64,000 bases of DNA, from the sequence record LR756508.1. One strand, 5' to 3'. Shown in pieces: positions 3,498 through 64,000 of the stretch (position 1 is its first letter; the number at the start of each line of letters is the position of its first letter). The translations under genes were made by a program, and so were the position numbers. Below the pieces are notes generated by a model. That model had not been told where the DNA came from, searched no databases, and saw nothing but the letters and a program-made list of their open reading frames with translations.

Positions 3498-4796
3498 ATG
3501 GCAACGGTTTTTGGGTTGGACATAAATGAGATTAATACAAATAATCTCATTAGGGATAGACATGTAGAAACGATTTATGGTGTTCTCTCTGGAGATCCAG
3601 CTTATTCTAGTCCAGAACATGTAATCGACTTTACTGGTAGTTTAATGGCAGGTAAAGATAATAAAACTGCCAGTAACGTAAATTTTGGTTTTGCTTTTGG
3701 CGAAAATAATCGAGTCGGAGCAGAGTCAAGCTTAGTAGTAGGGAAGGATGGCAGGTCATTCGCTGAAGGCCAGTTTGTTTTAAGTGGTGGAAAAATCAAC
3801 AAAAGAGGTGATTCTCAAAAGTACGAGACGACTCGCACGTTTCAAACTGAGTCTGGTGGCAATAGCACATCAATGTTAATACCAACCCAAGATAATGTAA
3901 TTTCAAGTGTTGAGATAAGACTTACTGGCGTAGAGAAAAATGTTATTTCTACTAACAGTCTTATTTCTGCACATTATGACCTGGTTTTTGTTAATTCTAG
4001 AATCGATCCAGATAGTTCCGAAAGAGTTGGAAAGATTCTCTTTGTTGATAGAAACTGGCTGGCAAATGACAATAACAACAATCCGATAAATGATTCCACA
4101 AATGGCATTGAAGTCCAGTTTAATGTAACTTCTTCTCACAAGTTAGAACTAGAAGTAACAGACAATAGATCGTCTGGAAATGATATACACTGGTCGATTC
4201 ACATCGACGCATTGGAAACTTTCGCTGGAAAAGACATCAAGAGCTTTGGAGGTCGTGGTTATGAGAGCGGTTACATTTCAGACGGTGGAGAATCTGGATA
4301 CTTAAACCCAATTCAAGGTTGTTTTCCTCCACATTCAGAGGTCTTAGTGAACAATGAAGACCAGCCGATATTCGCTCGTAAAATAAAAGAAATTGAAGTT
4401 GGAGATTCACTTCTAGCGTTCAGTCCATCGCAGTCGGGCTTTGAAGACTACGAGACTTACAGAAGTGATAGAACTGGAATTCAAGAAATGAAGACGAGCA
4501 GCACTGTCGTTGAAGAAGTTTTTTATGGGTTTAAAGATTATATATACGAAGTTAATAATGGACTTGAAGTGTCGGCATCTCAACCTATTTTTGTTTATGA
4601 CCCTTCTGACGACTGCACAAAATTTGTAAGGGTCGATGAACTAAAAAACAACATGAAGTTGCTTAATAATGAAAAGAAATTCGTCAACATAAAAAGTATA
4701 GTCAAAAAGAAAGAACCGAGAGAAGTGGTTAGCCTTGATGTTGAGAAGCTGGATGTCTTCTTTGTGGAAGGTATTCTATTCCATAATAAGCACTAA
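3498..4796 (+). CDS. Putative fibre/structural protein with C-terminal Hint domain
   Basis: YadA-like repeats (FGFAFGENNRVGAESSLVVG). Hint block A GCFPPHSEV and terminal FFVEGILFHN. Confidence 0.6.
   Translation: MATVFGLDINEINTNNLIRDRHVETIYGVLSGDPAYSSPEHVIDFTGSLMAGKDNKTASNVNFGFAFGENNRVGAESSLVVGKDGRSFAEGQFVLSGGKINKRGDSQKYETTRTFQTESGGNSTSMLIPTQDNVISSVEIRLTGVEKNVISTNSLISAHYDLVFVNSRIDPDSSERVGKILFVDRNWLANDNNNNPINDSTNGIEVQFNVTSSHKLELEVTDNRSSGNDIHWSIHIDALETFAGKDIKSFGGRGYESGYISDGGESGYLNPIQGCFPPHSEVLVNNEDQPIFARKIKEIEVGDSLLAFSPSQSGFEDYETYRSDRTGIQEMKTSSTVVEEVFYGFKDYIYEVNNGLEVSASQPIFVYDPSDDCTKFVRVDELKNNMKLLNNEKKFVNIKSIVKKKEPREVVSLDVEKLDVFFVEGILFHNKH
4320..4787 (+). other. C-terminal Hint (BIL/hedgehog-like) autoprocessing domain
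   Basis: Starts CFPPHSEVLV and ends VVSLDVEKLDVFFVEGILFHN. It is followed by K-H-stop, so there is no C/S/T at +1. Confidence 0.75.
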
Positions 4797-17297: not shown

Positions 17298-17891
17298 ATG
17301 GAAAAACAAGAACGAAAACTTAGAGAGTTTATCCGAAGGAAAGTCCATAACCTTCTTAACGAAAGTTCTGGCACAGATGGAGGTTCTTCGGAAAAAGCAA
17401 TTCGAAAAGAGGTAAGAAGTGTCATTCATGAGCTTCTGGCTGAGTCTAATGGAAATCAGAAGACTTTGAATGAAGGAGTAATGGGTATGGCCGATATGCC
17501 TGCCGTTAATCCTGCAAACTCTTTTTCAAAACAAGGGAAGGAAAACTTTTCTTATGATCCAAATGCCGTAAGTCAGATGGCAAAGCGAGATCGCCAGTCT
17601 GCAGGTGCCTCTACGCAGTCTAATACGCTTCGAAGTGACAGCGACTTGAAGCAGGATCAAGATTACCAGACTGGTCCAAACAAAACTGGATACGATTCTT
17701 CTCAGGGGGAGAGCGAAAAAGTGATTTTTGAAAATCAAGAGTCAGGTGATAGGGCTTCCCTTTGGATCGAAGGCAACCAGTTGGTCTGCGAATACGAGTC
17801 GAAAAGTAAAGGAAGCCAAAAGACCAAACTTAGCGAAGAAAGGACCCGAGAGATCCTTGAAAAGATCCTCAACGACAACTTCCAAATGTAG
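17298..17891 (+). CDS. Leader-motif hypothetical protein
   Basis: MEKQERKLREFIRRKVHNLLNE, with the helix repeated as EKAIRKEVRSVIHELLAE. ATG at 17298 preferred over GTG at 17286. Confidence 0.6.
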   Translation: MEKQERKLREFIRRKVHNLLNESSGTDGGSSEKAIRKEVRSVIHELLAESNGNQKTLNEGVMGMADMPAVNPANSFSKQGKENFSYDPNAVSQMAKRDRQSAGASTQSNTLRSDSDLKQDQDYQTGPNKTGYDSSQGESEKVIFENQESGDRASLWIEGNQLVCEYESKSKGSQKTKLSEERTREILEKILNDNFQM

Positions 17892-31492: not shown

Positions 31493-31521
31493 ATGCTTGT
31501 AACTGTAGGAAAAAGCTATGG

Positions 31522-31821
31522 GAATGTTCAAGAAAGTATTAGTTACTGGGTGAATTGAACCGGTAAGAGAAAGATTTAGAGTAGCCAGATATAGCGGCAG
31601 AAAAGCTGGTCTCATAAGTATGTTGTAAAAACTTCTTTATCTGGAGCGATGGCTTCTCGCTAAAAATCTTTGTAAGCTGAAAACTTAGTTCAAAACTTCT
31701 ACGTTTGTAGCTCGCCAGGTGAAAACCTTCACAGATCAAACTTTTGTTAAAAGCACGAGAAAGACTGTACTGAAAAAGATTGGAGTAAGAATCTCCTCAC
31801 TTTAGCGAAGAGAGACTTCAA
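31522..31821 (+). mobile_element. Non-coding IS200/IS605-derived mini-element, copy A (partly decayed)
   Basis: Colinear with 61907..62224: GAATTGAACC, CCAGATATAG, AAAGCTGGTCT, GTAGCTCGC, and right end AGAATCTCCTCACTTTAGCGAAGAGAGACTTCAA. The left hairpin is lost. Confidence 0.7.
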
Positions 31822-32479: not shown

Positions 32480-34204
32480 ATGTCAGACAACAAAGACTTG
32501 CTTGTAGATTATCAACCTCTTGAGTATGATAAGGAGGTAATTAAGGAGTCTATTGATAAAGATGATGGGCCGCTGGTGGTGGAGGGAACCCTCCAAAGAG
32601 CCGACGCAAAAAATCAAAATGGTAGGGTGTATCCAAAGGACGTGCTGAAAGATGAAGCTGAGAGGTACATGAAAGAAAAGGTGAATAAGAATAATGCGTT
32701 AGGCGAATTAGATCACCCTGATTGCCTCAAAAAACATAGCGCACAAGCACTTACGGTGGATGGGTTTAAGTATATATCCAATGTTGAAGTAGGTGAGTCC
32801 ATCGTTACAATTAATCCAGATACTGGCGATGTAGAGATAGAAGAGGTCCAGGAAGTAATTGACGAAGAATATAGTGGACCAATGTATCAGATCAGTTCTG
32901 GTAGAATGGATATCCAGGTCACTCCCAACCATAGATTTCTACTTCTTCCACGAAAAGACTATCCTGACCGTGATCCGTACTGGGTGAATGCAGAAGAACT
33001 ATATGAGAACAGAACCAGTCACAGTAAATCCCGAATTCCAAAAGAAATTTGGGGAGGCTGGAACGGAAAAAGTAATGTAAATGGAACTTCCAAACCACTT
33101 CATGAGAACTTTGCGTTTCCGTCAATCGATTCAGATGTTTTCTTTAAGTTCATCGGAATCTGGCTTGCGGACGGAGATACAGTAACTGACAGAAATGTTG
33201 TCCAACTGCACCAAGTCAAGGAAGAAAGCACTCAAGAAATTCGAACTCTTCTTTCAAAATTCCCGAACGATTTGACCTGGAGTGAAGAAAACAAGGAAAA
33301 TGGTTTCGGAAATACAAAAACAATATTTAGAACCCGAAATTCAGAGCTGTATTCTTATCTTCGAGATAATTTCGGCGAAGACTGTTATTCAAAAGAAATC
33401 CCAGCAGATGTAAAAAATGCACCACCAGAAAAAATCAAGAATCTCCTTGACTGGTTTGTAAAAGGTGATGGAACAGAGTTTGAAACTCAAAGGAGTGACA
33501 CAAGAAGAAGATTCTTCTCCACGTCGGAAAAACTAGTTGATGATCTCCAAGAAATAGCATTGAAACTGGGTCATAATGGCTCTATTCAAGAATTTGATCC
33601 TATGAATGATGCTCCGATTGGAGATCGAAAAATAAAATCAGAAAACAAAGAAAAACTTTACATCTATGAATTTCTCAAAAATGATGGTTATGGATTAGAT
33701 AAGAGGTGTAGTGATATTAAGAGGTTTAATTTTGATGGAAGAGTAACATGTCTTTCTGTTCCAAATGGCACCTTTTACGCTAAAGATGAAAATGGAGCCT
33801 GCTTTTGGACCGGCAACAGCTCAGTAGTAAACCTCAAAAACGTTTCTCATAACGTAATAGACATGGAGTGGGATGGAAATGATCTGAACGGAAAGCTTGA
33901 AATTCTCGATACCCCGTCTGGCGAGATACTTCAAGATCTCCTCGAAGCAGGAATTCGACTTGGAATTTCGTCCCGAGGATTGGGTTCTGTATCAAAAAGA
34001 AGAGATGGAGCTGTTGAAGTTCAAGATGACTACTCGATTGTATGTTTTGATATGGTCAGCTCGCCTAGCACGCATGGTGCATTTATTGAACCCATTAATG
34101 AAGCAGTAGATAGAAGAAGGGTGGAAGAAGCCCAGAAATGGCATTCAGTTGACCGAATGGCACAAGAAATTGTTGGAGAACTTTCTGAAAAATACTCGGT
34201 TTAG
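32480..34204 (+). CDS. gp21: Prohead core protease with intein (about 209 aa after splicing)
   Basis: LQRADAKNQNGRVYP, LGELDHPD, GISSRGLGS, FDMVSSPSTHGA. Confidence 0.95.
   Translation: MSDNKDLLVDYQPLEYDKEVIKESIDKDDGPLVVEGTLQRADAKNQNGRVYPKDVLKDEAERYMKEKVNKNNALGELDHPDCLKKHSAQALTVDGFKYISNVEVGESIVTINPDTGDVEIEEVQEVIDEEYSGPMYQISSGRMDIQVTPNHRFLLLPRKDYPDRDPYWVNAEELYENRTSHSKSRIPKEIWGGWNGKSNVNGTSKPLHENFAFPSIDSDVFFKFIGIWLADGDTVTDRNVVQLHQVKEESTQEIRTLLSKFPNDLTWSEENKENGFGNTKTIFRTRNSELYSYLRDNFGEDCYSKEIPADVKNAPPEKIKNLLDWFVKGDGTEFETQRSDTRRRFFSTSEKLVDDLQEIALKLGHNGSIQEFDPMNDAPIGDRKIKSENKEKLYIYEFLKNDGYGLDKRCSDIKRFNFDGRVTCLSVPNGTFYAKDENGACFWTGNSSVVNLKNVSHNVIDMEWDGNDLNGKLEILDTPSGEILQDLLEAGIRLGISSRGLGSVSKRRDGAVEVQDDYSIVCFDMVSSPSTHGAFIEPINEAVDRRRVEEAQKWHSVDRMAQEIVGELSEKYSV
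32723..33817 (+). mobile_element. Intein with LAGLIDADG endonuclease in gp21 (365 aa)
   Basis: HPD|CLKKHSAQ...CLSVPNGTFYAKDENGACFWTGN|S, with FIGIWLADG and WFVKGDG blocks. Confidence 0.9.
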
Positions 34205-40546: not shown

Positions 40547-42193
40547 ATGTCCAGAACAATAGTACCAGAGGAAGAAACAAGGGCTGCAGATCTTACTGAT
40601 CTAAAAGACAATATTCGGCCCACGACTGACCGAAAAGTATTAGTCGAAAGTGATGCCGACTCTGAGCCTAATGTGTTTTACTGGGACGAAGGCGCTGAAG
40701 CATCTAATGCGGACGGTGTCACCACGGTCGAATCTAATATCGCCCAGTATTCTAATGGTGGTTCTAGCGAGGGGCTTTGGAAGAGGACAGTGTTTCCTCT
40801 TAACGCAGCTTCAACCGACGATCTAGCCGAGGGTTCAACGAACCTTTACTTTACCGATGAGAGGGTAGATGACAGGGTCGGTTCCCTTCTAGCTGGCGGC
40901 ACAAACATTAACTTGTCCTACGATGATGCCAGCGGCTCGCTGACTATAAACACCGATGACGTTACAGTTGACATTTCTGAAGACGGAACGGAAGTTCTGG
41001 CTGATGTCGGAAATATCAACTATACGGCAGGGTTCAACGTTACTGATGCTGGCGGTGGAACTGCTACTGTCGACTTGAATCTAAATGAGAAGTCGACCGA
41101 TGACCTCCCCGAAGGCTCAACGAGCCTGTATTACACCGACGAAAGGGTTGACGATGAAGTTGATAATCTACTTGAAGGTGGTAGTAATATTTCACTTACT
41201 TACGACGATGGTACTGGATCACTTACTATCGATGCCGTCGGAACCTCAACCGACGTTTCCGAGAATGGAACTACGGTCGTAAGCAATACAAATGATATTA
41301 ACTTTACGTTTGGGTTCGATGTTGCCGACGACAGCGATGGAACGGTAACAGTCGATTTGGATCTTAGCGAGAAGTCAACAGACGACCTACCCGAAGGCTC
41401 CAGTAACTTGTATTTCACTGACGAGAGGGCACAAGACGCAGTTCTTGATACCGTAAGCGGCCAGAAAGGAATTACATGGACTTACGATGATGCTGGAAAC
41501 AGCGCGACGGTTTCTCTTGATAACCTTAATTCCTTTACGACCGACGACCTAGCCGAGGGTTCCACAAACCTTTACTTCACCGACGAGAGGGTTGATGACA
41601 GAGTTGATTCGCTTCTTATAGGCGGGAATAATATTACTTTGACCTACGACGACGGCGCAGGATCTATTACCATTGATACTACTGATGTTACGGTAGACGT
41701 GTCGGAGGATGGAAGCACCGTCGTATCCGATGTAGGAGATATTAATTTCACGTCTGGATTCAACGCGATTGACGATAGCGACGGCACGGTAACTGTTGAT
41801 ATGAACCTAAACGAGAAGTCAACCGACGACTTGCCAGAAGGTTCTACAAACCTCTATTACACCGACGAGCGTGCCCAAGATACCGTAGCATCGATGACAA
41901 CTGGCGGAACGAACATTTCAACCAGTTACGACGATGCTAACGATGTATTTACGATTGATAACGACGTTCGGTTTGGAAGCGAGACCTTTAGTGGAGATGC
42001 AGTTACGACGTCATTTGACATTCCACATGGACTAGCGCAGAAACCCACGTCGTGGACCGTCCAGCCAGTTAGCGACGACGCTTCTGCACTATCACACGCA
42101 ACGGCTGACGCTACAAATATTACGATAGTCTACGATGTCGCCCCTCCAAGTGGAACTGATAACATTGAGGTTAATTATAGCCTCCTAATTTAA
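40547..42193 (+). CDS. Repeat-rich virion fibre protein
   Basis: Five (S/T)TDDL(A/P)EGS(T/S)(N/S)LY(F/Y)TDER repeats with beta-rich spacers, very acidic. Confidence 0.7.
   Translation: MSRTIVPEEETRAADLTDLKDNIRPTTDRKVLVESDADSEPNVFYWDEGAEASNADGVTTVESNIAQYSNGGSSEGLWKRTVFPLNAASTDDLAEGSTNLYFTDERVDDRVGSLLAGGTNINLSYDDASGSLTINTDDVTVDISEDGTEVLADVGNINYTAGFNVTDAGGGTATVDLNLNEKSTDDLPEGSTSLYYTDERVDDEVDNLLEGGSNISLTYDDGTGSLTIDAVGTSTDVSENGTTVVSNTNDINFTFGFDVADDSDGTVTVDLDLSEKSTDDLPEGSSNLYFTDERAQDAVLDTVSGQKGITWTYDDAGNSATVSLDNLNSFTTDDLAEGSTNLYFTDERVDDRVDSLLIGGNNITLTYDDGAGSITIDTTDVTVDVSEDGSTVVSDVGDINFTSGFNAIDDSDGTVTVDMNLNEKSTDDLPEGSTNLYYTDERAQDTVASMTTGGTNISTSYDDANDVFTIDNDVRFGSETFSGDAVTTSFDIPHGLAQKPTSWTVQPVSDDASALSHATADATNITIVYDVAPPSGTDNIEVNYSLLI
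40811..41881 (+). repeat. Intragenic repeats of the fibre shaft (five units)
   Basis: ACCGA(C/T)GA(C/T)CT...GAAGG/GAGGG...ACCGA(C/T)GA(G/A) pattern recurring at about 40811, 41092, 41375, 41537 and 41819. Confidence 0.8.
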
Positions 42194-56898: not shown

Positions 56899-57604
56899 GT
56901 GATTAAGTTCAAAAAACTTCTTTTTGAGGACGGTAGGGTTAACGCGGCGCGAGAAGTAGATAAACTGCTACAAACCCAGTTTCAAAATGACCTACCGAAA
57001 CTCTATAGAGCATCAAAGAGAGAGTTTGAAGCTTCTTATAAAATTTTGAGGTTTGGAGATGAAATTCGAGAACCAAAGGGATCTTCTTATGACGCACAGA
57101 TTATATTAGATGGAGTAGCTGAAGCGGTTAATCCTAATATCCCAAAGAGGTTTGAGTCAAAATTTGCTACGACTGAATATTTTGAAGGAAGTGGGTTAGT
57201 ATTCGGCACAAACACCTACGTGGTGTTCCCAGATAAAAATTCAGATATCGCTAGTTTTTCTGGAGATACAATTGATCTTCGTGGGGACATTGACGCCATG
57301 ATAGCTGACTTTTCTGGAAGGGAGCCTCAATATCCGAAGTTTAAAGAAATGCTGGAGAAAATTCATTCGGTGGACGAAAAGGAATTGGAAAGACGTAAGC
57401 GGTGAACTTGAAAATGGAGGACTTTTTGGAACAAAAATGTTAGAAAGTATTGAGAATTATTTCAAAGCTATGAAACGTGGGGCAAAACAAGACTCAGATG
57501 AAATAATGTTTTCGGGAGATCAATATTTGTATGTCAAACCTGATTTTTTTGATGAGCACTTTCGGAGGTCCGGGGGTGAATGGGAATTAAGACCTGATTA
57601 TTAG
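56899..57604 (+). pseudogene. ART-fold paralog 5 (subgroup B) split by a +1 frameshift
   Basis: Frame 0 (LYRAS...PKRFESKFATT) stops at 57405. The +1 frame encodes IENYFKAMKRG...DEIMFSGDQYLYV...SGGEWEL* to 57604, homologous to the C-termini of paralogs 6 and 7. Confidence 0.7.
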
Positions 57605-57606
57605 TG

Positions 57607-58386
57607 ATGAGATTTAAAAGACTTTTAGATCAAAAAGAAAAACTAAAAAAGATCGAGTCTCTTCTCCAATCTGATTTCCGAGGTTCGCTGTATCCAACAA
57701 TTTATCGAGGAACCCGCAGTTCAGTAGACGTTTTTGACGTCCTGAAAATAAGAAAAGATAGAAAGCCCTCAGGCACCAGACTTGAAGCCCAGGGACTTGT
57801 TGATGCCTATGAAAACAACGTCTATAAAGACTGGCCAAAAAGAAGTGAAAGTAAGTTTGGCTCGCCAGATCGAGTTTCTGCAGGAGGATATGGGCCACAT
57901 GAGGTAGTTGTGTTTCCAGAAAAATCGGCAGATGTATGCTGGATTGAATACGATCCTACCACTGAGTTTTTCCACGACAGTTACAGCGCTTTGAAGACCA
58001 TTATCGATTCTAAAATGTTTGGAGAGTTTTTGGACGTTTTGGAAACAAATGGCTTCGAGAAGCTAAGTCAATTTTTGTATAAAACAGAAAAGTTCTATCG
58101 AGACGAGATAAGTTATGAAAAGTATAACAAGTATCTGAACGATAATATTGAAAGGCTGAGAAGTAAATATGAAGACTTGAAAAACGAAAAGACTGAACTC
58201 CAACATCAAAGAGGAGAGCTGCTGAAGGTTTTTCGGGCTGTTGAAATGTATTTTTCCACGCTTAAAGAGGGAGCAAATAAGGGGGCTTATGAAATTATTT
58301 TTGATGGAGAAAGATATTTGAGGATAAATGCTGACCTGTTTGAAGATAACTTTTCTTGGAGTGGAAAAAGGTGGAAGGTGAGTTAG
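57607..58386 (+). CDS. Putative ART-fold protein, paralog 6 (subgroup B)
   Basis: MRFKRLL; IYRGT...PKRSESKFGSPDRVSAGGYG...VVFP...YEIIFDGERYLRI. Confidence 0.55.
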   Translation: MRFKRLLDQKEKLKKIESLLQSDFRGSLYPTIYRGTRSSVDVFDVLKIRKDRKPSGTRLEAQGLVDAYENNVYKDWPKRSESKFGSPDRVSAGGYGPHEVVVFPEKSADVCWIEYDPTTEFFHDSYSALKTIIDSKMFGEFLDVLETNGFEKLSQFLYKTEKFYRDEISYEKYNKYLNDNIERLRSKYEDLKNEKTELQHQRGELLKVFRAVEMYFSTLKEGANKGAYEIIFDGERYLRINADLFEDNFSWSGKRWKVS

Positions 58387-58801: not shown

Positions 58802-59575
58802 ATGAAGTTCAAAGAGCTCTTAAAAGAGCAGAGCGTCGAAAAATTAAACAAGTTATTGAAAGAGGAGTATAGAAATGATGTTAAAAATCTGGTATACCGA
58901 GGCACCTCTACGTCAGTTGAAAAGTTTGACGTTCGAAAAATAAGAAAAGATAGGACGCCGAGGGATACGCCAGAAATGGTTGAAGCTATTGTTTCAGCCT
59001 TCGAAAATAATTTATATGATTCACAGCCAAAGAGAAGCGAGAGTAAGTTTGGATCTGCTGATAGGTCGGCAGTAAGTCAGTATGGAACCCATCAAGTTCT
59101 GGTTTTTCCAGAAAGAGACGCAGGCTTGAAGTCACTTAAAACAGACTCTACACCTACCTATTTTATGCCAGCTTACCATTCAATTGAGTCTGTTTTGATG
59201 AGCGACCGGTACGATCAGATCTTAAAAGAACTTGCCAGCGAAGGCTTAAAAAATTTGGTTTATTTTTACGGACAAGCTCAAGAATATCAACTTGAGGAGC
59301 TAAATTATGGAAGCTGGAAAGCTTATTTAAATAAAGAGATCAAGAAAATTCTTAAAGATGTAAATAAGGCTTCTTCTCTTGATATTTCTGAGGACGTAGT
59401 AAAAGACATAGCCTATAGTTTTCGAAGTATAGAAAGATATTTCAAGAATTTAAAGGAGAACGTAGGAGAAAGGGACAAGGAAGTTATTTTTGATGGAGAA
59501 ACTTATCTTAGAGTAGATCCCAAATATTTTAAAGATCACTTTATGTGGAGCGGAAATAGATGGCTGCTTTCTTAA
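58802..59575 (+). CDS. Putative ART-fold protein, paralog 7 (subgroup B)
   Basis: MKFKELLKE; VYRGT...PKRSESKFGSADRSAVSQYG...LVFP...KEVIFDGETYLRV. Confidence 0.55.
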   Translation: MKFKELLKEQSVEKLNKLLKEEYRNDVKNLVYRGTSTSVEKFDVRKIRKDRTPRDTPEMVEAIVSAFENNLYDSQPKRSESKFGSADRSAVSQYGTHQVLVFPERDAGLKSLKTDSTPTYFMPAYHSIESVLMSDRYDQILKELASEGLKNLVYFYGQAQEYQLEELNYGSWKAYLNKEIKKILKDVNKASSLDISEDVVKDIAYSFRSIERYFKNLKENVGERDKEVIFDGETYLRVDPKYFKDHFMWSGNRWLLS

Positions 59576-60951: not shown

Positions 60952-61818
60952 ATGGAAAAAATGCTTAATGTAAGACTGACGAAAGAATTAGAGGAGTTCT
61001 TGGATTCTCGATCTAAGAACAAATCAGAATACGTGAGAGATCTTATAAACAAGGATATGTTGGAAAATAGAGAGATTGATCCTAAGAAGGAGTATGATAT
61101 GTGTTCTGAAGACCTGCTTTATTTTGCCGAAAATTATTGTTATATTAAGAATTCAAATGGAAGTAAGAAGGCATTTGAACCTTACCAGTTCCAAAAAGAG
61201 ATTCTCCAAAATCTGTCTAATAACGAATGGCTTTTGATCGTCAAATCAAGACAGTTGGGGATAACTACAATCTTAGCTATTTACAGCCTCTGGAAAGTTT
61301 TATTCCATTCTGAGATAAATGTTTCTTATGGTTCTCCAAATAAGGATATGAATTCAATCTTTTTAAATGAAAGAGTGTCTTTTATTTATGAGAACCTACC
61401 AGACTGGATGGTAAAGCCAAAGCTACGATCTAAAAGATTTATAAAGGTTTTTCAAAATAGATCCGAGCTCATGGAAATCCCACCGAGAGGTCACAAAGGA
61501 AAAGGCTACGACGTGGCTATTTTTGACGAGGTTTCATTTATACCTGAGTTTGTTAGAATGTGGAGTAGAACTAACATGCAGATAAATCATCCAGATGGTC
61601 AAGTAATTCTTACCACTAACGGGATAATTAAAGAAAGGGAAAACTATGATGCACTAAAAAAGTTTTATAAGAAAAGTCAATTTAAGAACCTGGAGTATTC
61701 ATATCTTGATCATCCAGAAAGAGATGAAGATTATAAAGATGAAATAGTGGAGGGTGGAATTATGACACATGAAAAGTTTCTCAAAGAGCACGGCGGCTTG
61801 GTAGAGATAAAGGGTTAA
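60952..61818 (+). CDS. Ribbon-helix-helix domain fused to a terminase-like ATPase domain (no nuclease domain)
   Basis: MLNVRLTKELEEFL...NKSEYVRDLI (RHH); YFAENYCYI...IVKSRQLGITT...IFDEVSFI parallels gp17 at 17950. Confidence 0.75.
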   Translation: MEKMLNVRLTKELEEFLDSRSKNKSEYVRDLINKDMLENREIDPKKEYDMCSEDLLYFAENYCYIKNSNGSKKAFEPYQFQKEILQNLSNNEWLLIVKSRQLGITTILAIYSLWKVLFHSEINVSYGSPNKDMNSIFLNERVSFIYENLPDWMVKPKLRSKRFIKVFQNRSELMEIPPRGHKGKGYDVAIFDEVSFIPEFVRMWSRTNMQINHPDGQVILTTNGIIKERENYDALKKFYKKSQFKNLEYSYLDHPERDEDYKDEIVEGGIMTHEKFLKEHGGLVEIKG

Positions 61819-61906
61819 AAAATGTGGAATTGCCTGCAGGATGTTCGCTTAAAAAAAATGAGAATCATCTAATTGGCGAATAGAATCCATATCAAATATA
61901 TTTATA

Positions 61907-62224
61907 GACACGTTCAAGAAAACCCTCGGCTTTAGCCGAGGGATGAATTGAACCACTTTGAGCAAGAAGACGAAGACAGAAAACGACCAGATATAGTGAC
62001 AGGAAAGCTGGTCTTGGAAAGTATGTCGAGGAAACCCGTCTACCTGGAGTTCATGGCGTCTCCCAGGGAAGTTCTGCAAGCTCCGATCTATTGGAGTTCA
62101 AGAGCTTTCATGTAGCTCGCGGAGTGGAAGTCACTGCAAGCTCAAACTTCTGCTAAGAACGCGAGAAAGATGCTTTGGAGATCTTGGAGCAGAATCTCCT
62201 CGCTTTAGCGAGGGGAGACGTCAA
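61907..62224 (+). mobile_element. Non-autonomous IS200/IS605 mini-element, copy B (left end + probable omegaRNA scaffold + right end)
   Basis: Left hairpin CCCTCGGC-TTTA-GCCGAGGG then ATGAATTGAACCACT. Right hairpin TCTCCTCGC-TTTA-GCGAGGGGAGA then CGTCAA. No transposase or TnpB ORF. Confidence 0.8.
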
Positions 62225-62260
62225 TGGATAGGATGATTAAATAAAGAAGAGAACAAAAAA

Positions 62261-63139
62261 GTGTCGCTTACTAATCAAAAGTCTTCGAAGAGTATCCGAG
62301 GCCAAAAGTTCGAAAGTTCAACTGGTACTCTTTCAAAAGTCATTTTGAGACTCGGATTTGTTTTTGGCGATCATGGAACTGTTGAATATATGTTTCCTGA
62401 TCATCAAGGTTCTGATAAAGTTTATGACGCTAACAAATTCTTCAGAGTTATAGAAAACGGAAGACGGTTCAAAGCCTGGGTCAAATCCAACGAGAAGTCT
62501 GCTAAAGAAGAGTTTGAAGAAAACGGCATAAAATACAATCAAAAAGCAAAACAGTTTGATAAAACAAATGTAGGTATCCTGCTTCCTGTGTTTCGTGGAG
62601 AAATGAATGTCAGGCGAGGAGTGTTGTGGCATGAAGAGGCAGGAACAGATGTATCCTCTATTTGTGATGTGATGCCATCAATAAAGTCTTTTGTCTTAAA
62701 CCAGCTTAAAAAGAAAGGTAGCATGAAGAGCAAAAAAAGAGACCGTTACAAAAAAGACGTCAAAGAAAAGAAAATTAGAGAAATAGTAAGGAGTGAGATT
62801 AAAAAGCACTTGAACGAAGCTGATGATGTAGAAAACATTAATAATAAAGTTCATGAGTTTTGGAAAGAACTCACTGTTTTTAATACTAAGATTGCTGAAA
62901 ACTATTTTCAAGATATTGCTACCGATTTAGATAAGATGCAGACGACTTGGGATAAATCTGGAAGGGTTAAAAAAGAGTGGATGCAACTCAAACAAGAATT
63001 CAATTCTTTTATCGAGGGTGTTAACCGTTACAAATCATTTTTTAAAGAGACCATGGACAGCCAGTCCATATCAAAGGTAGAAGATACAGAAGATGGATAC
63101 TATCGTGTAGAACGAGGTGGCGACTACCATGAAATGTAG
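62261..63139 (+). CDS. Hypothetical two-domain protein with internal leader helix
   Basis: Internal KEKKIREIVRSEIKKHLNE. GTG start. Confidence 0.55.
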   Translation: MSLTNQKSSKSIRGQKFESSTGTLSKVILRLGFVFGDHGTVEYMFPDHQGSDKVYDANKFFRVIENGRRFKAWVKSNEKSAKEEFEENGIKYNQKAKQFDKTNVGILLPVFRGEMNVRRGVLWHEEAGTDVSSICDVMPSIKSFVLNQLKKKGSMKSKKRDRYKKDVKEKKIREIVRSEIKKHLNEADDVENINNKVHEFWKELTVFNTKIAENYFQDIATDLDKMQTTWDKSGRVKKEWMQLKQEFNSFIEGVNRYKSFFKETMDSQSISKVEDTEDGYYRVERGGDYHEM

Positions 63140-63199
63140 TTTAAGACTAACTTAAACCACTACTAAAGTCGACTTTAGTAATTCACAGTGAAAGATAAT

Positions 63200-63526
63200 A
63201 TGCAACTTTCCGAAGAAGAGCTTAGAAATATTGTAAGAGAAGAAGCAATTTACGGGGTCAAAGAAAAAGAGATTCTTGACTATTTGGAGGAAGAAATCTT
63301 GTCAATGTATGAGGACTATTCAACCGAGCGAAGCGGTGATCTTCTTCTCGTCAATGACGAAAAAGGAGAAACGTTTGAGATTGCGGTGAAAAAAGCTCTT
63401 GATGTGAACCCAACAGTAGAAGTTCGTTACAGTAAACTGGAAGACTCTAAGTATGCCAGTAGAAAAACGTTCTACCTAAGTCAAGTTGATGAGTTGAAGC
63501 ACACGTTGAAACACCGCCAGTTTTAA
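63200..63526 (+). CDS. Leader-motif small protein
   Basis: MQLSEEELRNIVREE. ATG at 63200 preferred over GTG at 63188. Confidence 0.6.
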   Translation: MQLSEEELRNIVREEAIYGVKEKEILDYLEEEILSMYEDYSTERSGDLLLVNDEKGETFEIAVKKALDVNPTVEVRYSKLEDSKYASRKTFYLSQVDELKHTLKHRQF

Positions 63527-63558
63527 GCATTTAAAACTTTTTCTAAAAGAGATATCAC

Positions 63559-63828
63559 ATGAGGCTGAATAAAGAAATTATTAGGGGAGTAGTTGAGGAA
63601 GAACTTGCTGAAGTTAAACTTAGAAAGAAAGTAAGAGAGAAAGCTAAAGATATAATCAAGGAAAAAGAAAGAAGAAAAGCTGCTTCTCAGGCTCTTAATG
63701 GGATCCAGTCTAAAATCAAAGAGCAGAAGAAGAATATTCCAGATGAGTTTAAAGACTCTCTTGGTTCAGAACTTGATAAATTGAGTGAGAAAATTCAACA
63801 GTTGATGGGAGACTATAACCTAGAATAA
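63559..63828 (+). CDS. Leader-motif helical protein
   Basis: MRLNKEIIRGVVEEELAEVKLRKKVREK. Confidence 0.6.
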   Translation: MRLNKEIIRGVVEEELAEVKLRKKVREKAKDIIKEKERRKAASQALNGIQSKIKEQKKNIPDEFKDSLGSELDKLSEKIQQLMGDYNLE

Positions 63829-63839
63829 AAAGAGTTAAT

Positions 63840-64000
63840 GAATGTCCAATAAATCCTGCGGCTTTAGCCGCAGGATGAATTGAACCACTTCTACATACAA
63901 CTAAGTTTTGTTTTTAGAATTTTCTTTTAAATCACATGAAACTGACGAAAACGTTGAAATTTAAGCTTGAAGACCTTTCAGGCCACGACAGGTACATTTT
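63840..64000 (+). mobile_element. Left end of an IS200/IS605 element, truncated by the window end
   Basis: TCCTGCGGC-TTTA-GCCGCAGGA hairpin plus TGAATTGAACCACTT, the same left-end layout as copy B. Confidence 0.75.
63936..64000 (+). CDS. 5' end of a probable TnpB-like ORF
   Basis: MKLTKTLKFKLEDLSGHDRYI directly after the IS left end. The T-L-K-F-K-L start is TnpB-like, but only 21 codons are visible. Confidence 0.45.
   Translation, partial: MKLTKTLKFKLEDLSGHDRYI

What the first reader, a model, noticed from the sequence alone, without database searches (positions are those of the whole stretch)
61907..64000. Protein-free IS200/IS605 mini-element as a stand-alone omegaRNA guide cassette near a probable tnpB element
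Seen: a 318 bp element with intact left and right TTTA-loop hairpins ending GTCAA. Its interior is non-coding and structured (GACCAG...CTGGTC stem, CTGCAAGCTC twice). An element with the same left end followed by a TnpB-like start codon region begins at 63840. Known: TnpB omegaRNA derives from the element right end, and the flanking sequence after the end becomes the guide. Inference: the mini-element could supply a guide in trans (predicted guide TGGATAGGATGATTAAATAA...), arming one TnpB with several specificities against competing phages or empty alleles. If TnpB is RuvC-dead, it could instead act as a TldR-like regulator.
Basis: partly seen in the sequence, partly recalled or inferred. Interest (0 to 1): 0.75.

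Follow-up and report, generated by a model that had tools for sequence, protein, structure and literature searches.

The report
Guide-RNA-only mini transposon in huge phage
A 318-bp protein-free remnant of an IS200/IS605 transposon in a 484-kb phage genome still carries the complete guide-RNA (omegaRNA) scaffold of a TnpB nuclease, but its matching nuclease is encoded elsewhere in the genome, not by the tnpB gene next door; elements of this kind are already described in bacteria.

Summary
Window 61907-62224 is a 318-bp non-coding element with IS608-like left and right hairpins, ending GTCAA. The window is part of uncultured huge phage LR756508.1 (484 kb).

That genome holds 3 "group-1" tnpB elements, 6 "group-2" tnpB elements, 4 group-1 minis (two in the window, at ~31520-31821 and 61907-62224) and 1 group-2 mini. 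No Y1 tnpA was found.

The mini's last 206 nt match the 3' ~210 nt of the group-1 tnpB elements, which is the omegaRNA region. The helices are kept and show covariation: 90% of cells pair, against 35-50% in slid controls, and 16 pairs carry double changes.

So it is a PATE-like deletion derivative that kept only the ends and the omegaRNA. Meers et al. 2023 already describe this class, including the need for TnpB in trans.

The tnpB starting at 63936 is group 2: about 26% identical, with an unrelated omegaRNA and a different right end. Its D-E-D triad looks intact, so the TldR idea has no support there.

Expression, TnpB loading and cleavage remain untested, and no empty site was found. Verdict: a new member of a known kind, of moderate interest.

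The parts
61901..61906 (+). Candidate TAM / TnpA target site (TTTAT-A) just 5' of the left end; boundary uncertain by 1-2 nt
   Evidence: Left flanks of the 7 group-1-type copies end TTAT (3 copies), TTAC (2), TTAAC (1) and CTAT (1). No empty site was available to fix the junction.
61907..61960 (+). Left end (LE): outer stem GTTCAA/TTGAAC enclosing hairpin CCCTCGGC-TTTA-GCCGAGGG
   Evidence: DNA fold -12.8 kcal/mol, z = -5.2. The same LE is found at 12 other places in the genome, in front of both tnpB groups and in the minis.
61961..62018 (+). Mini-specific spacer with the GACCAG...CTGGTC stem (61985-62013); origin unknown; contains TATAGT, a possible -10 box
   Evidence: Conserved in all four minis and has no counterpart in the full-length elements. 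The promoter role is speculation; the consensus scan did not call it.
62019..62224 (+). Group-1 TnpB omegaRNA scaffold (206 nt): hairpins S1-S4, long-range helix UGGCGUCUC (62054-62062) with GAGACGUCA (62215-62223), and right-end hairpin 62195-62216
   Evidence: Homologous to the 3' 210-212 nt of the three group-1 tnpB elements and to Salinibacteraceae relatives. Covariance model hit at 208.7 bits, E about 1e-62. Pair counts 90.3% against 35-50% slid. Per-module folds. RNA fold z = -2.3 with the long-range helix in both MFE and centroid.
62188..62224 (+). Right end (RE): GAAT, hairpin with TTTA loop, then ...GACGTCAA (cleavage motif TCAA, as I recall for IS608)
   Evidence: The end of similarity among all copies falls exactly after GTCAA.
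62225..62244 (+). Predicted guide (TGGATAGGATGATTAAATAA), inferred only from its position
   Evidence: By analogy with established TnpB biology, where the guide is the sequence immediately 3' of the RE. In an incompletely reviewed in-genome scan, none of the inspected matches for the element guides were near-perfect; the best seen was 2 mismatches, for mini E's guide. Not tested experimentally.
31520..31821 (+). Mini copy A: a degenerate member of the same family (LE hairpin lost, helices S1/S2 and the long-range helix damaged, GC 37.6%)
   Evidence: 168.7 bits; LE z = -0.9.
63840..64000 (+). Left end (63840-63892) and first 65 nt of tnpB (ATG at 63936) of a group-2 IS200/IS605 element. The element runs to record 189252, which is 1252 nt beyond the window
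   Evidence: The protein is 430 aa with motifs IGIDLG, VVMENL and NVDLNAAVNI.

Best explanation
The 318-bp element is a non-autonomous, PATE-like internal-deletion derivative of an IS608-like IS200/IS605 element.

Shown here:
- It keeps the left end, the right end and the whole omegaRNA scaffold of the 'group-1' TnpB family of this phage genome.
- It has lost the tnpB coding sequence.
- Four such minis and three full-length group-1 tnpB elements coexist in the genome.
- The genome has no Y1 tnpA.

Inferred:
- The mini is transcribed on the + strand, either by read-through from the upstream terminase-ATPase gene or from a weak promoter.
- Its RNA is bound and processed by group-1 TnpB made in trans from the copies at record 118.9 or 411.3 kb.
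- The resulting RNP, guided by the 3' flank TGGATAGGATGATTAA, cuts a TTAY-flanked empty site in any genome copy or co-infecting relative that lacks the insert.
[quoted passage not shown] 2023.
- New insertions would need a TnpA supplied by the host.
For: - The window is LR756508.1 positions 124001-188000.
- The mini's last 206 nt align with the 3' end of the group-1 tnpB elements, starting just after the RuvC-III motif.
- The covariance model finds exactly 7 copies in 484 kb, with E from 1e-50 to 1e-62, and 4 relatives from Salinibacteraceae, IMG/VR and a metagenome.
- 90.3% of cells pair, against 35-50% when partners are slid. 16 pairs have double changes, against 3-7. No shuffle out of 500 reaches the observed score.
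- Hairpins S1-S4 are present in B, D, E and all full-length copies although their sequences differ.
- B and E differ at 9.5% of the columns that are invariant in the full-length copies, but at 31% of the variable columns.
- The group-1 tnpB copies are under purifying selection (dN/dS 0.10-0.13). dS drops in the last 50 codons, which overlap the omegaRNA.
- D173, E269 and D350 are present in two of the three copies.
- B and D are 100% identical over 244 nt but have different flanks, which points to recent copying.
- GC is 46-49.5% for the elements against 39.6% for the genome.
- The concept is documented for bacterial PATEs.
Against: - There is no expression, binding or cleavage data.
- No empty site or polymorphism was found. 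The only other assemblies carry the insert and break at it.
- No TnpA is in the genome: tblastn best E 0.32, profile best E 0.4. Current mobility is therefore unproven.
- Hairpin S2 is remodelled and S1 shortened in the minis, so compatibility with group-1 TnpB is assumed.
- Only 10 distinct sequences were used, and the alignment was fitted to the model. Conservation at the RE could reflect TnpA recognition at the DNA level rather than RNA function.
- The RuvC-II glutamate assignment is off by one residue in the HMMER alignment to a Cas12f structure.
- No convincing promoter was found.
Confidence: 0.6

Rival explanations
1. Inert relic: the mini is a decaying deletion remnant with no present function. 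Its conserved blocks reflect recent origin, or DNA-level constraints for transposition, and not use as a guide RNA.
For: Copy A is clearly decayed: LE hairpin lost, helices broken, GC ameliorated to 37.6%. There is no tnpA in the genome. No promoter was called inside the element. B and D are recent copies, so their identity says nothing about selection.
Against: E is 19% diverged from B yet keeps all helices with compensatory changes, and it changes three times less in the core columns. The deletion retained exactly the omegaRNA module in five independent or derived minis of two families.
Confidence: 0.3
2. One reading: the adjacent tnpB (window 63936 onward) uses the mini's RNA, so one nuclease gains several specificities.
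For: The two are 1.6 kb apart and share the same left-end sequence.
Against: The adjacent TnpB is group 2, about 26% identical to group 1 over the RuvC half only. Its own omegaRNA/RE region is unrelated in sequence. Profiles of either omegaRNA do not hit the other family. Group 2 has its own mini at record 205362-205739.
Confidence: 0.05
3. TldR-like regulation: a nuclease-dead TnpB uses mini-encoded guides to bind DNA and regulate phage or host genes.
For: The 270-kb group-1 copy has K in place of the conserved acidic residue of RuvC-II (VVIGKLKG against VVIGELKG), yet it is a full-length ORF in a family with dN/dS about 0.1.
Against: The neighbour and two group-1 copies keep all three acidic residues. 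No near-perfect match to the mini guides turned up among the matches inspected in the genome (output only partly read). The guides are simply the insertion flanks, as in ordinary transposon copies.
Confidence: 0.05
4. A different structured RNA, such as a group I intron/IStron, a riboswitch or a terminator cassette, and not an omegaRNA.
For: The interior is structured, and the genome appears rich in other selfish elements.
Against: No Rfam family matches, even at E up to 10. There is direct homology to the tnpB 3' end. The element lies 88 nt after the terminase stop codon and does not interrupt a reading frame.
Confidence: 0.03

Closest known systems
PATE-like non-autonomous IS200/IS605 elements that encode omegaRNAs (Geobacillus stearothermophilus; Meers et al. 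2023, PMC10055086; PATEs first named in Haloquadratum, PMC3119063)
   Same: No protein gene, LE and RE hairpins shared with tnpB-bearing elements of the same genome, omegaRNA retained, and TnpB needed in trans.
   Different: It sits in a 484-kb phage genome that has no tnpA at all. Four minis are served by three cognate nuclease genes. Hairpin S2 is remodelled once freed from coding constraint.
IS608 (Helicobacter pylori) end architecture
   Same: Subterminal hairpins at both ends, TTAC-type site 5' of the LE, RE ending TCAA, and GAAT just 5' of the RE hairpin (the IS608 details are from my own knowledge; ours are).
   Different: No tnpA is linked. The LE has an extra outer stem GTTCAA/TTGAAC. 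The TAM varies (TTAT/TTAC/TTAA) and was not determined experimentally.
ISDra2-type TnpB-omegaRNA system (Karvelis et al. 2021, PMC8612924; processing of the tnpB mRNA 3' end, PMC10278001)
   Same: The omegaRNA overlaps the 3' end of tnpB and ends at the RE, and the guide is the flanking DNA. The protein has a RuvC domain plus zinc ribbon.
   Different: The protein is only distantly related (E 2.6e-8 to 8bf8). RuvC-II reads IGEL where the usual motif is hhhEDL. The scaffold is about 206-212 nt with its own fold.
Salinibacteraceae IS605 elements (tnpA + tnpB), e.g. Salinivenus iranica CB7 NCRB01000007.1
   Same: TnpB is 59-70% identical, and the omegaRNA blocks and helices are the same, with compensatory changes.
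   Different: The bacterial copies carry tnpA directly upstream, lack hairpin S4 and are GC-rich. The phage copies lack tnpA.

Membership tests
IS200/IS605 non-autonomous mini-element (PATE-like) | Subterminal hairpins at both ends, without terminal inverted repeats | tested here: met
   LE z = -5.2 and RE z = -2.6 as DNA. Both hairpins have TTTA loops.
IS200/IS605 non-autonomous mini-element (PATE-like) | No protein-coding gene | tested here: met
   Only short open frames, which differ in frame and strand between copies.
IS200/IS605 non-autonomous mini-element (PATE-like) | Ends shared with full-length tnpB/tnpA elements in the same genome | tested here: met
   The LE is shared with 9 tnpB elements. 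The RE and omegaRNA are shared with the 3 group-1 elements.
IS200/IS605 non-autonomous mini-element (PATE-like) | Insertion 3' of a short conserved target motif, without target-site duplication | tested here: inconclusive
   TTAY-like motifs precede 6 of 7 copies, but the exact junction is unknown. Mini E has a 13/16 direct repeat in its flanks. No empty site was found.
IS200/IS605 non-autonomous mini-element (PATE-like) | Mobilised by a Y1 TnpA in trans | not testable with these tools
   No TnpA in the phage genome. The B/D identity with different flanks suggests recent copying.
TnpB omegaRNA | Derived from the tnpB 3' end / RE and ending at the transposon boundary | tested here: met
   Homology starts after RuvC-III (AAGTATGTC) and stops at GTCAA.
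TnpB omegaRNA | Conserved secondary structure supported by covariation | tested here: met
   90.3% paired, 16 pairs with double changes, no shuffle out of 500 as high, slid controls 35-50%. Searches give the per-module folds. Caveats: 10 distinct sequences, and an alignment fitted to the model.
TnpB omegaRNA | A cognate TnpB with an intact RuvC triad is available | tested here: met
   The group-1 copies at 118.9 and 411.3 kb have D173/E269/D350. The 270-kb copy has K at 269. The motif II register is uncertain by one residue.
TnpB omegaRNA | Expressed, bound by TnpB, and directing TAM-dependent cleavage | not testable with these tools
   No RNA or biochemical data. Only weak promoter-like sites lie upstream.
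TldR-like RNA-guided regulator | RuvC-inactivated TnpB homologue | tested here: not met
   The neighbour has IGIDLG / VVMENL / NVDLNAAVNI. Only the distant 270-kb group-1 copy has a single E-to-K change.
Group I intron / IStron | Group I ribozyme core | tested here: not met
   No Rfam match at the gathering threshold or at E up to 10.

The most novel reading that the evidence does not exclude
In this huge phage, dispersed guide-only cassettes (4 for group 1, 1 for group 2) and a few trans-acting TnpB genes work together as a multi-locus, RNA-guided gene drive. During co-infection each cassette directs cutting of the corresponding empty allele in competitor genomes, and so drags its flanking phage genes into the progeny. 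That would be a phage-borne, array-less analogue of one nuclease with many guides, a plausible step between transposon omegaRNAs and CRISPR arrays.
Probability: 0.25. Interest if true: 0.65.

Novelty: new member of a known kind. Interest (0 to 1): 0.4.

Why it matters
If the minis are used, the phage separates 'guide' from 'nuclease' across a 484-kb genome and carries more guide cassettes than cognate nuclease genes. This would be a natural test case for trans-acting omegaRNAs and for TnpB-driven homing between co-infecting phages. It also gives a compact (404-405 aa) TnpB family with a defined 206-nt scaffold, and natural scaffold variants (shortened S1, remodelled S2) that show which parts tolerate change. 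If the minis are not used, the element is an ordinary decaying transposon remnant.

Tried and rejected
- Rfam at the gathering threshold on the window, and at E up to 10 on 61700-62400, gave nothing relevant, so group I intron/IStron and known sRNAs were rejected.
- An exact RE pattern in IMG/VR gave 0 hits.
- The 14-mer TGTAGCTCGCGGAG in IMG/VR and in the metagenomes returned 118 and 120 loci. Almost all were chance matches. nhmmer kept only L157 (identical to L012) and L182.
- Relatives of the terminase protein in IMG/VR are only 22-30% identical, so no related phage was available for empty-site comparison. The phage collection holds only the source record.
- Exact-protein look-ups of both flanking genes found two other assemblies, ERZ27230157 and SRR6651948. 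They carry the insert and break at the repeat, so they give no empty allele.
- A degenerate DNA pattern for TnpA was not robust. It was replaced by tblastn and a 5-sequence profile, both negative.
- tblastn of TnpA against the phage collection could not show whether the source record was among the unlisted hits.
- MAFFT and the covariance model misalign helix S3 of the Salinibacteraceae sequences, so that helix was checked by per-module folding instead.
- LE motifs were not found in the bacterial relatives with the phage LE pattern, so the TAM could not be refined.
- The ORF after the mini (62261-63139) has no Pfam or PHROG match, so a split terminase could be neither shown nor excluded.
Full report
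**Source and observation**

The window is 100% identical to positions 124001-188000 of LR756508.1, an unannotated 484,177-bp 'uncultured phage' genome. It contains no N.

- A 318-bp stretch, 61907-62224.
- A left end made of GTTCAA, hairpin CCCTCGGC-TTTA-GCCGAGGG and TTGAAC.
- A right-end hairpin with a TTTA loop, followed by ACGTCAA.
- The GACCAG/CTGGTC stem.
- CTGCAAGCTC twice.
- The same left end at 63840-63892, followed by ATG at 63936.

As single-stranded DNA the left end folds with z = -5.2 and the right end with z = -2.6. The 31-nt left-end core (61928-61958) has 0 chance matches expected in the window. Reading past the window in the public record shows that the ORF at 63936 is a 430-aa TnpB. 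It matches Pfam OrfB_IS605 and Cas12f1-like TNB and has the motifs IGIDLG, VVMENL and NVDLNAAVNI.

**Inventory of the genome**

I fetched the whole record and searched it with blastn, tblastn, nhmmer and a covariance model. The genome holds two families of IS200/IS605-type elements. They share a left end but have different right ends.

| Family | Right end | Copies (record position) | Notes |
|---|---|---|---|
| Group 1, full length | ...GAGACGTCAA | 118813-120166, 270079-271423, 411267-412622 | TnpB of 404-405 aa, about 83% identical to one another |
| Group 2, full length | ...GGGGGTCATTCAC | six copies | includes the neighbour at window 63840 |
| Group 1, protein-free minis | as group 1 | A (window ~31520-31821), B (the finding), E (226229-226541), D (381867-382175) | four copies |
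| Group 2, mini | as group 2 | ~205362-205739 | one copy |

- Group-1 and group-2 TnpB are only about 26% identical, and only over the RuvC half.
- A distant TnpB-like ORF lies at 483.4 kb.
- All full-length and mini elements except the 54.8-kb group-2 copy lie on the + strand.
- No Y1 TnpA is detectable. tblastn with a cognate TnpA gives a best E of 0.32. A profile of five Salinibacteraceae/IMG-VR TnpAs run against all stop-to-stop frames gives a best E of 0.4.

**What the interior is**

The last 206 nt of mini B (62019-62224) are homologous to the last 210-212 nt of the three group-1 elements. The homology starts at AAGTATGTC, just after the RuvC-III motif of tnpB, and ends at GTCAA. That is where TnpB omegaRNAs are encoded (established knowledge; PMC8612924, PMC10278001).

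Relatives of group-1 TnpB turned up in several places:
- Salinivenus and Salinibacter genomes, 59-70% identical.
- An IMG/VR contig.
- One metagenome contig, L182, which is itself an internal-deletion derivative.

The relatives with a complete 3' end carry the same sequence blocks.

A covariance model built from the six phage copies then known finds exactly seven copies in the 484-kb genome (169-209 bits) and the four relatives (74-94 bits).

On the resulting alignment:
- 90.3% of cells form standard pairs, against 35-50% when partners are slid by 1-3 columns.
- 16 of 43 pairs show changes on both sides, against 3-7 in the slid controls.
- No shuffle out of 500 reaches the observed covariation score.

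Folding each variable module separately shows hairpins S1, S2 and S3 in every member, plus S4 in the phage copies. The exception is the degenerate copy A. The hairpin sequences differ between members. A long-range helix UGGCGUCUC/GAGACGUCA places the guide next to the scaffold core. It covaries G-C to U-A in the bacterial relatives and appears in both the MFE and the centroid of mini B.

Caveats on this evidence:
- Only ten distinct sequences were available.
- The alignment is fitted to the model.
- The right-end hairpin is also a DNA signal for TnpA.

**Signs of constraint**

- B and E are 81% identical overall. They differ at 9.5% of the columns that are invariant in the full-length copies, but at 31% of the variable columns.
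- The three group-1 tnpB genes have dN/dS of 0.10-0.13. Their dS falls from 0.75-1.16 to 0.37-0.52 in the last 50 codons, which overlap the omegaRNA.
- The elements have 46-49.5% GC in a 39.6% GC genome. The decayed copy A has drifted to 37.6%.
- B and D are identical over their last 244 nt, and all their differences lie in the first 79 columns. They sit in unrelated flanks. Two independent assemblies break exactly at these repeats.

**Partner nuclease**

The mini carries the group-1 scaffold and right end. The adjacent tnpB is group 2. Its omegaRNA region has its own covarying hairpins and no similarity to the mini. Profiles of each omegaRNA hit only their own family.

The candidate partners are the group-1 genes outside the window.

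HMMER alignment to a Cas12f structure (8j3r) matches GVDLG (D173), IGEL (E269) and HRDSVGAWNI (D350) to the RuvC motifs. For motif II the register is off by one residue. Two copies have E at this position, and relatives have D. The 270-kb copy has K.

**Ends and TAM**

The right end reads GAAT, hairpin, ...TCAA. Left flanks end in TTAT, TTAC or TTAA(C). This matches what I recall of IS608 (TTAC at the left, TCAA at the right, GAAT as the right guide). That comparison rests on my own knowledge and was not tested here.

The base just 5' of the left hairpin tends to complement the last base of the putative TAM: AAAG with TTAC in four copies, and AAAA with TTAT in B. The exact junction remains uncertain by 1-2 nt because no empty site was found.

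**Mechanism**

Shown: the anatomy, the homology, the copy inventory, the absence of tnpA, and the structure conservation.

Inferred:
1. The mini is transcribed on the + strand. Weak sigma-70-like sites lie at 61858-61902, and there may be read-through from the terminase-ATPase gene.
2. Group-1 TnpB binds the RNA in trans.
3. The RNP cuts a TTAY + TGGATAGGATGATTAA empty site.
4. Recombination repairs the break and restores or spreads the insert.

In a phage, step 3 would act on sister genomes after excision or on co-infecting relatives that lack the insert. In the matches I inspected from an in-genome scan of the element guides, none was near-perfect (the output was cut). That fits a homing role more than a regulatory one.

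**Comparison with the known**

Meers et al. 2023 describe PATE-like elements without protein genes in Geobacillus stearothermophilus. [quoted passage not shown] TnpB genes are reported as frequent in phages.

The finding is therefore a new member of a known kind. My limited literature searches found no description of three features:
- the setting, a huge phage with 9 tnpB genes and 5 guide-only minis;
- the absence of any tnpA;
- the natural scaffold variants.

**Verdict**

- Observation: confirmed.
- Interpretation: partly supported. The class and the predicted guide are right. The partner is wrong, and the TldR alternative is unsupported.
- Function: untested.
- Interest: 0.4.

Noticed in passing
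window 31520-31821: A second copy of the same mini-element (copy A), 69-79% identical to B. Its left hairpin is eroded, its omegaRNA helices are broken and its GC has drifted to 37.6%. It lies just upstream of an ORF starting MKEQKLRRIIREII.
   Followed up: yes
LR756508.1 270138-271349 (L007:20138-21349), outside the window: One of the three group-1 tnpB copies has K where the others have the RuvC-II acidic residue (VVIGKLKG against VVIGELKG). It is otherwise a full-length ORF in a family with dN/dS about 0.1, so it may be a nuclease-dead copy.
   Followed up: partly
LR756508.1 ~205362-205739, outside the window: A protein-free derivative of the group-2 family as well: a degenerate left end, the tnpB 3' remnant with the omegaRNA, and a right end ...GGGGGTCGTTCAC (nhmmer E 1e-40).
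   Followed up: partly
window 61907-62224 versus LR756508.1 381867-382175: Minis B and D are identical over their last 244 nt, and all differences lie within the first 79 alignment columns (left end). This mosaic suggests gene conversion or recombination between copies. Independent assemblies (ERZ27230157 k119_98074; Logan SRR6651948_247234) break exactly at these repeats.
   Followed up: partly
LR756508.1 226208-226223 and 226542-226557; also 118798-118812 versus window 61892-61906: Mini E is flanked by a 13/16 direct repeat (CTTTTCGTATACTTAC ... CCTTTTGTATACTTAA), which is unexpected for IS200/IS605. The left flanks of mini B and of the 118-kb element share 14 of 15 nt beyond the presumed boundary (TCAAAtATATTTATA / TCAAAgATATTTATA). 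Unexplained.
   Followed up: no
window 60952-61818 and 62261-63139: The terminase large subunit ORF is only 288 aa and covers the N-terminal ATPase domain (Terminase_6N; PHROG 5989). The next ORF, after the mini, has no Pfam or PHROG match. No nuclease domain was identified nearby.
   Followed up: partly
window 31070, 37027, 37569, 38520 (looser variants at 17298, 30757, 31841, 63559); 14 strict matches genome-wide, all on the + strand: Many small ORFs begin with a shared N-terminal motif, M-x(2-9)-[KRQ]-L-[RKQ]-x-[IVLF]-[IV]-[KRNQ]-[EQD]-[EQ]-[IVLA], for example MKIQEQKLRGIIKEEI. Several elements sit directly upstream of such genes. It may be a shared targeting or propeptide sequence; function unknown.
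   Followed up: partly
window 32480-34204: A 574-aa ORF whose middle part looks, by eye, like an inserted intein or homing-endonuclease module (motifs such as IGIWLADGD and VKGDGTE). The clamp-loader-like ORF at L007:18678-20072 also looks interrupted. Not verified with any tool.
   Followed up: no
L013:2713-4152 and 4143-4340 (IMGVR_UViG_2791354990_000001): A 479-aa TnpB-like protein, 37% identical to group-1 TnpB, is followed directly by four copies of a 28-nt repeat (GGTGGCCCCGCATGCGCGGGGATAGTCC). The three spacers between them are 33, 33 and about 19 nt. It looks like a CRISPR array next to a TnpB/Cas12-like gene.
   Followed up: no
L182:380-800 (ERZ1034543 NODE_3716): A high-GC relative in which tnpB is internally deleted: the reading frame jumps from just after the RuvC-I motif (GIDLGEKHLATVFTGD) to the C-terminal end. 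The omegaRNA and right end are intact. This is an independent example of the same deletion route.
   Followed up: partly
L009:32236-32280 (record about 382236-382280): An intrinsic-terminator-like hairpin, GGAGGCGCGAGAGCGCCTC followed by T11, lies about 70 nt downstream of mini D. The 700-nt region around mini D has no ORF of 70 aa or more, no Rfam match and no tRNA/tmRNA gene.
   Followed up: partly
window 40799-41824; 57604-58386 versus 58802-59575: Three diverged copies of a 300-nt repeat (60-70% identical), and a pair of paralogous 257-260-aa ORFs side by side. Neither was examined.
   Followed up: no
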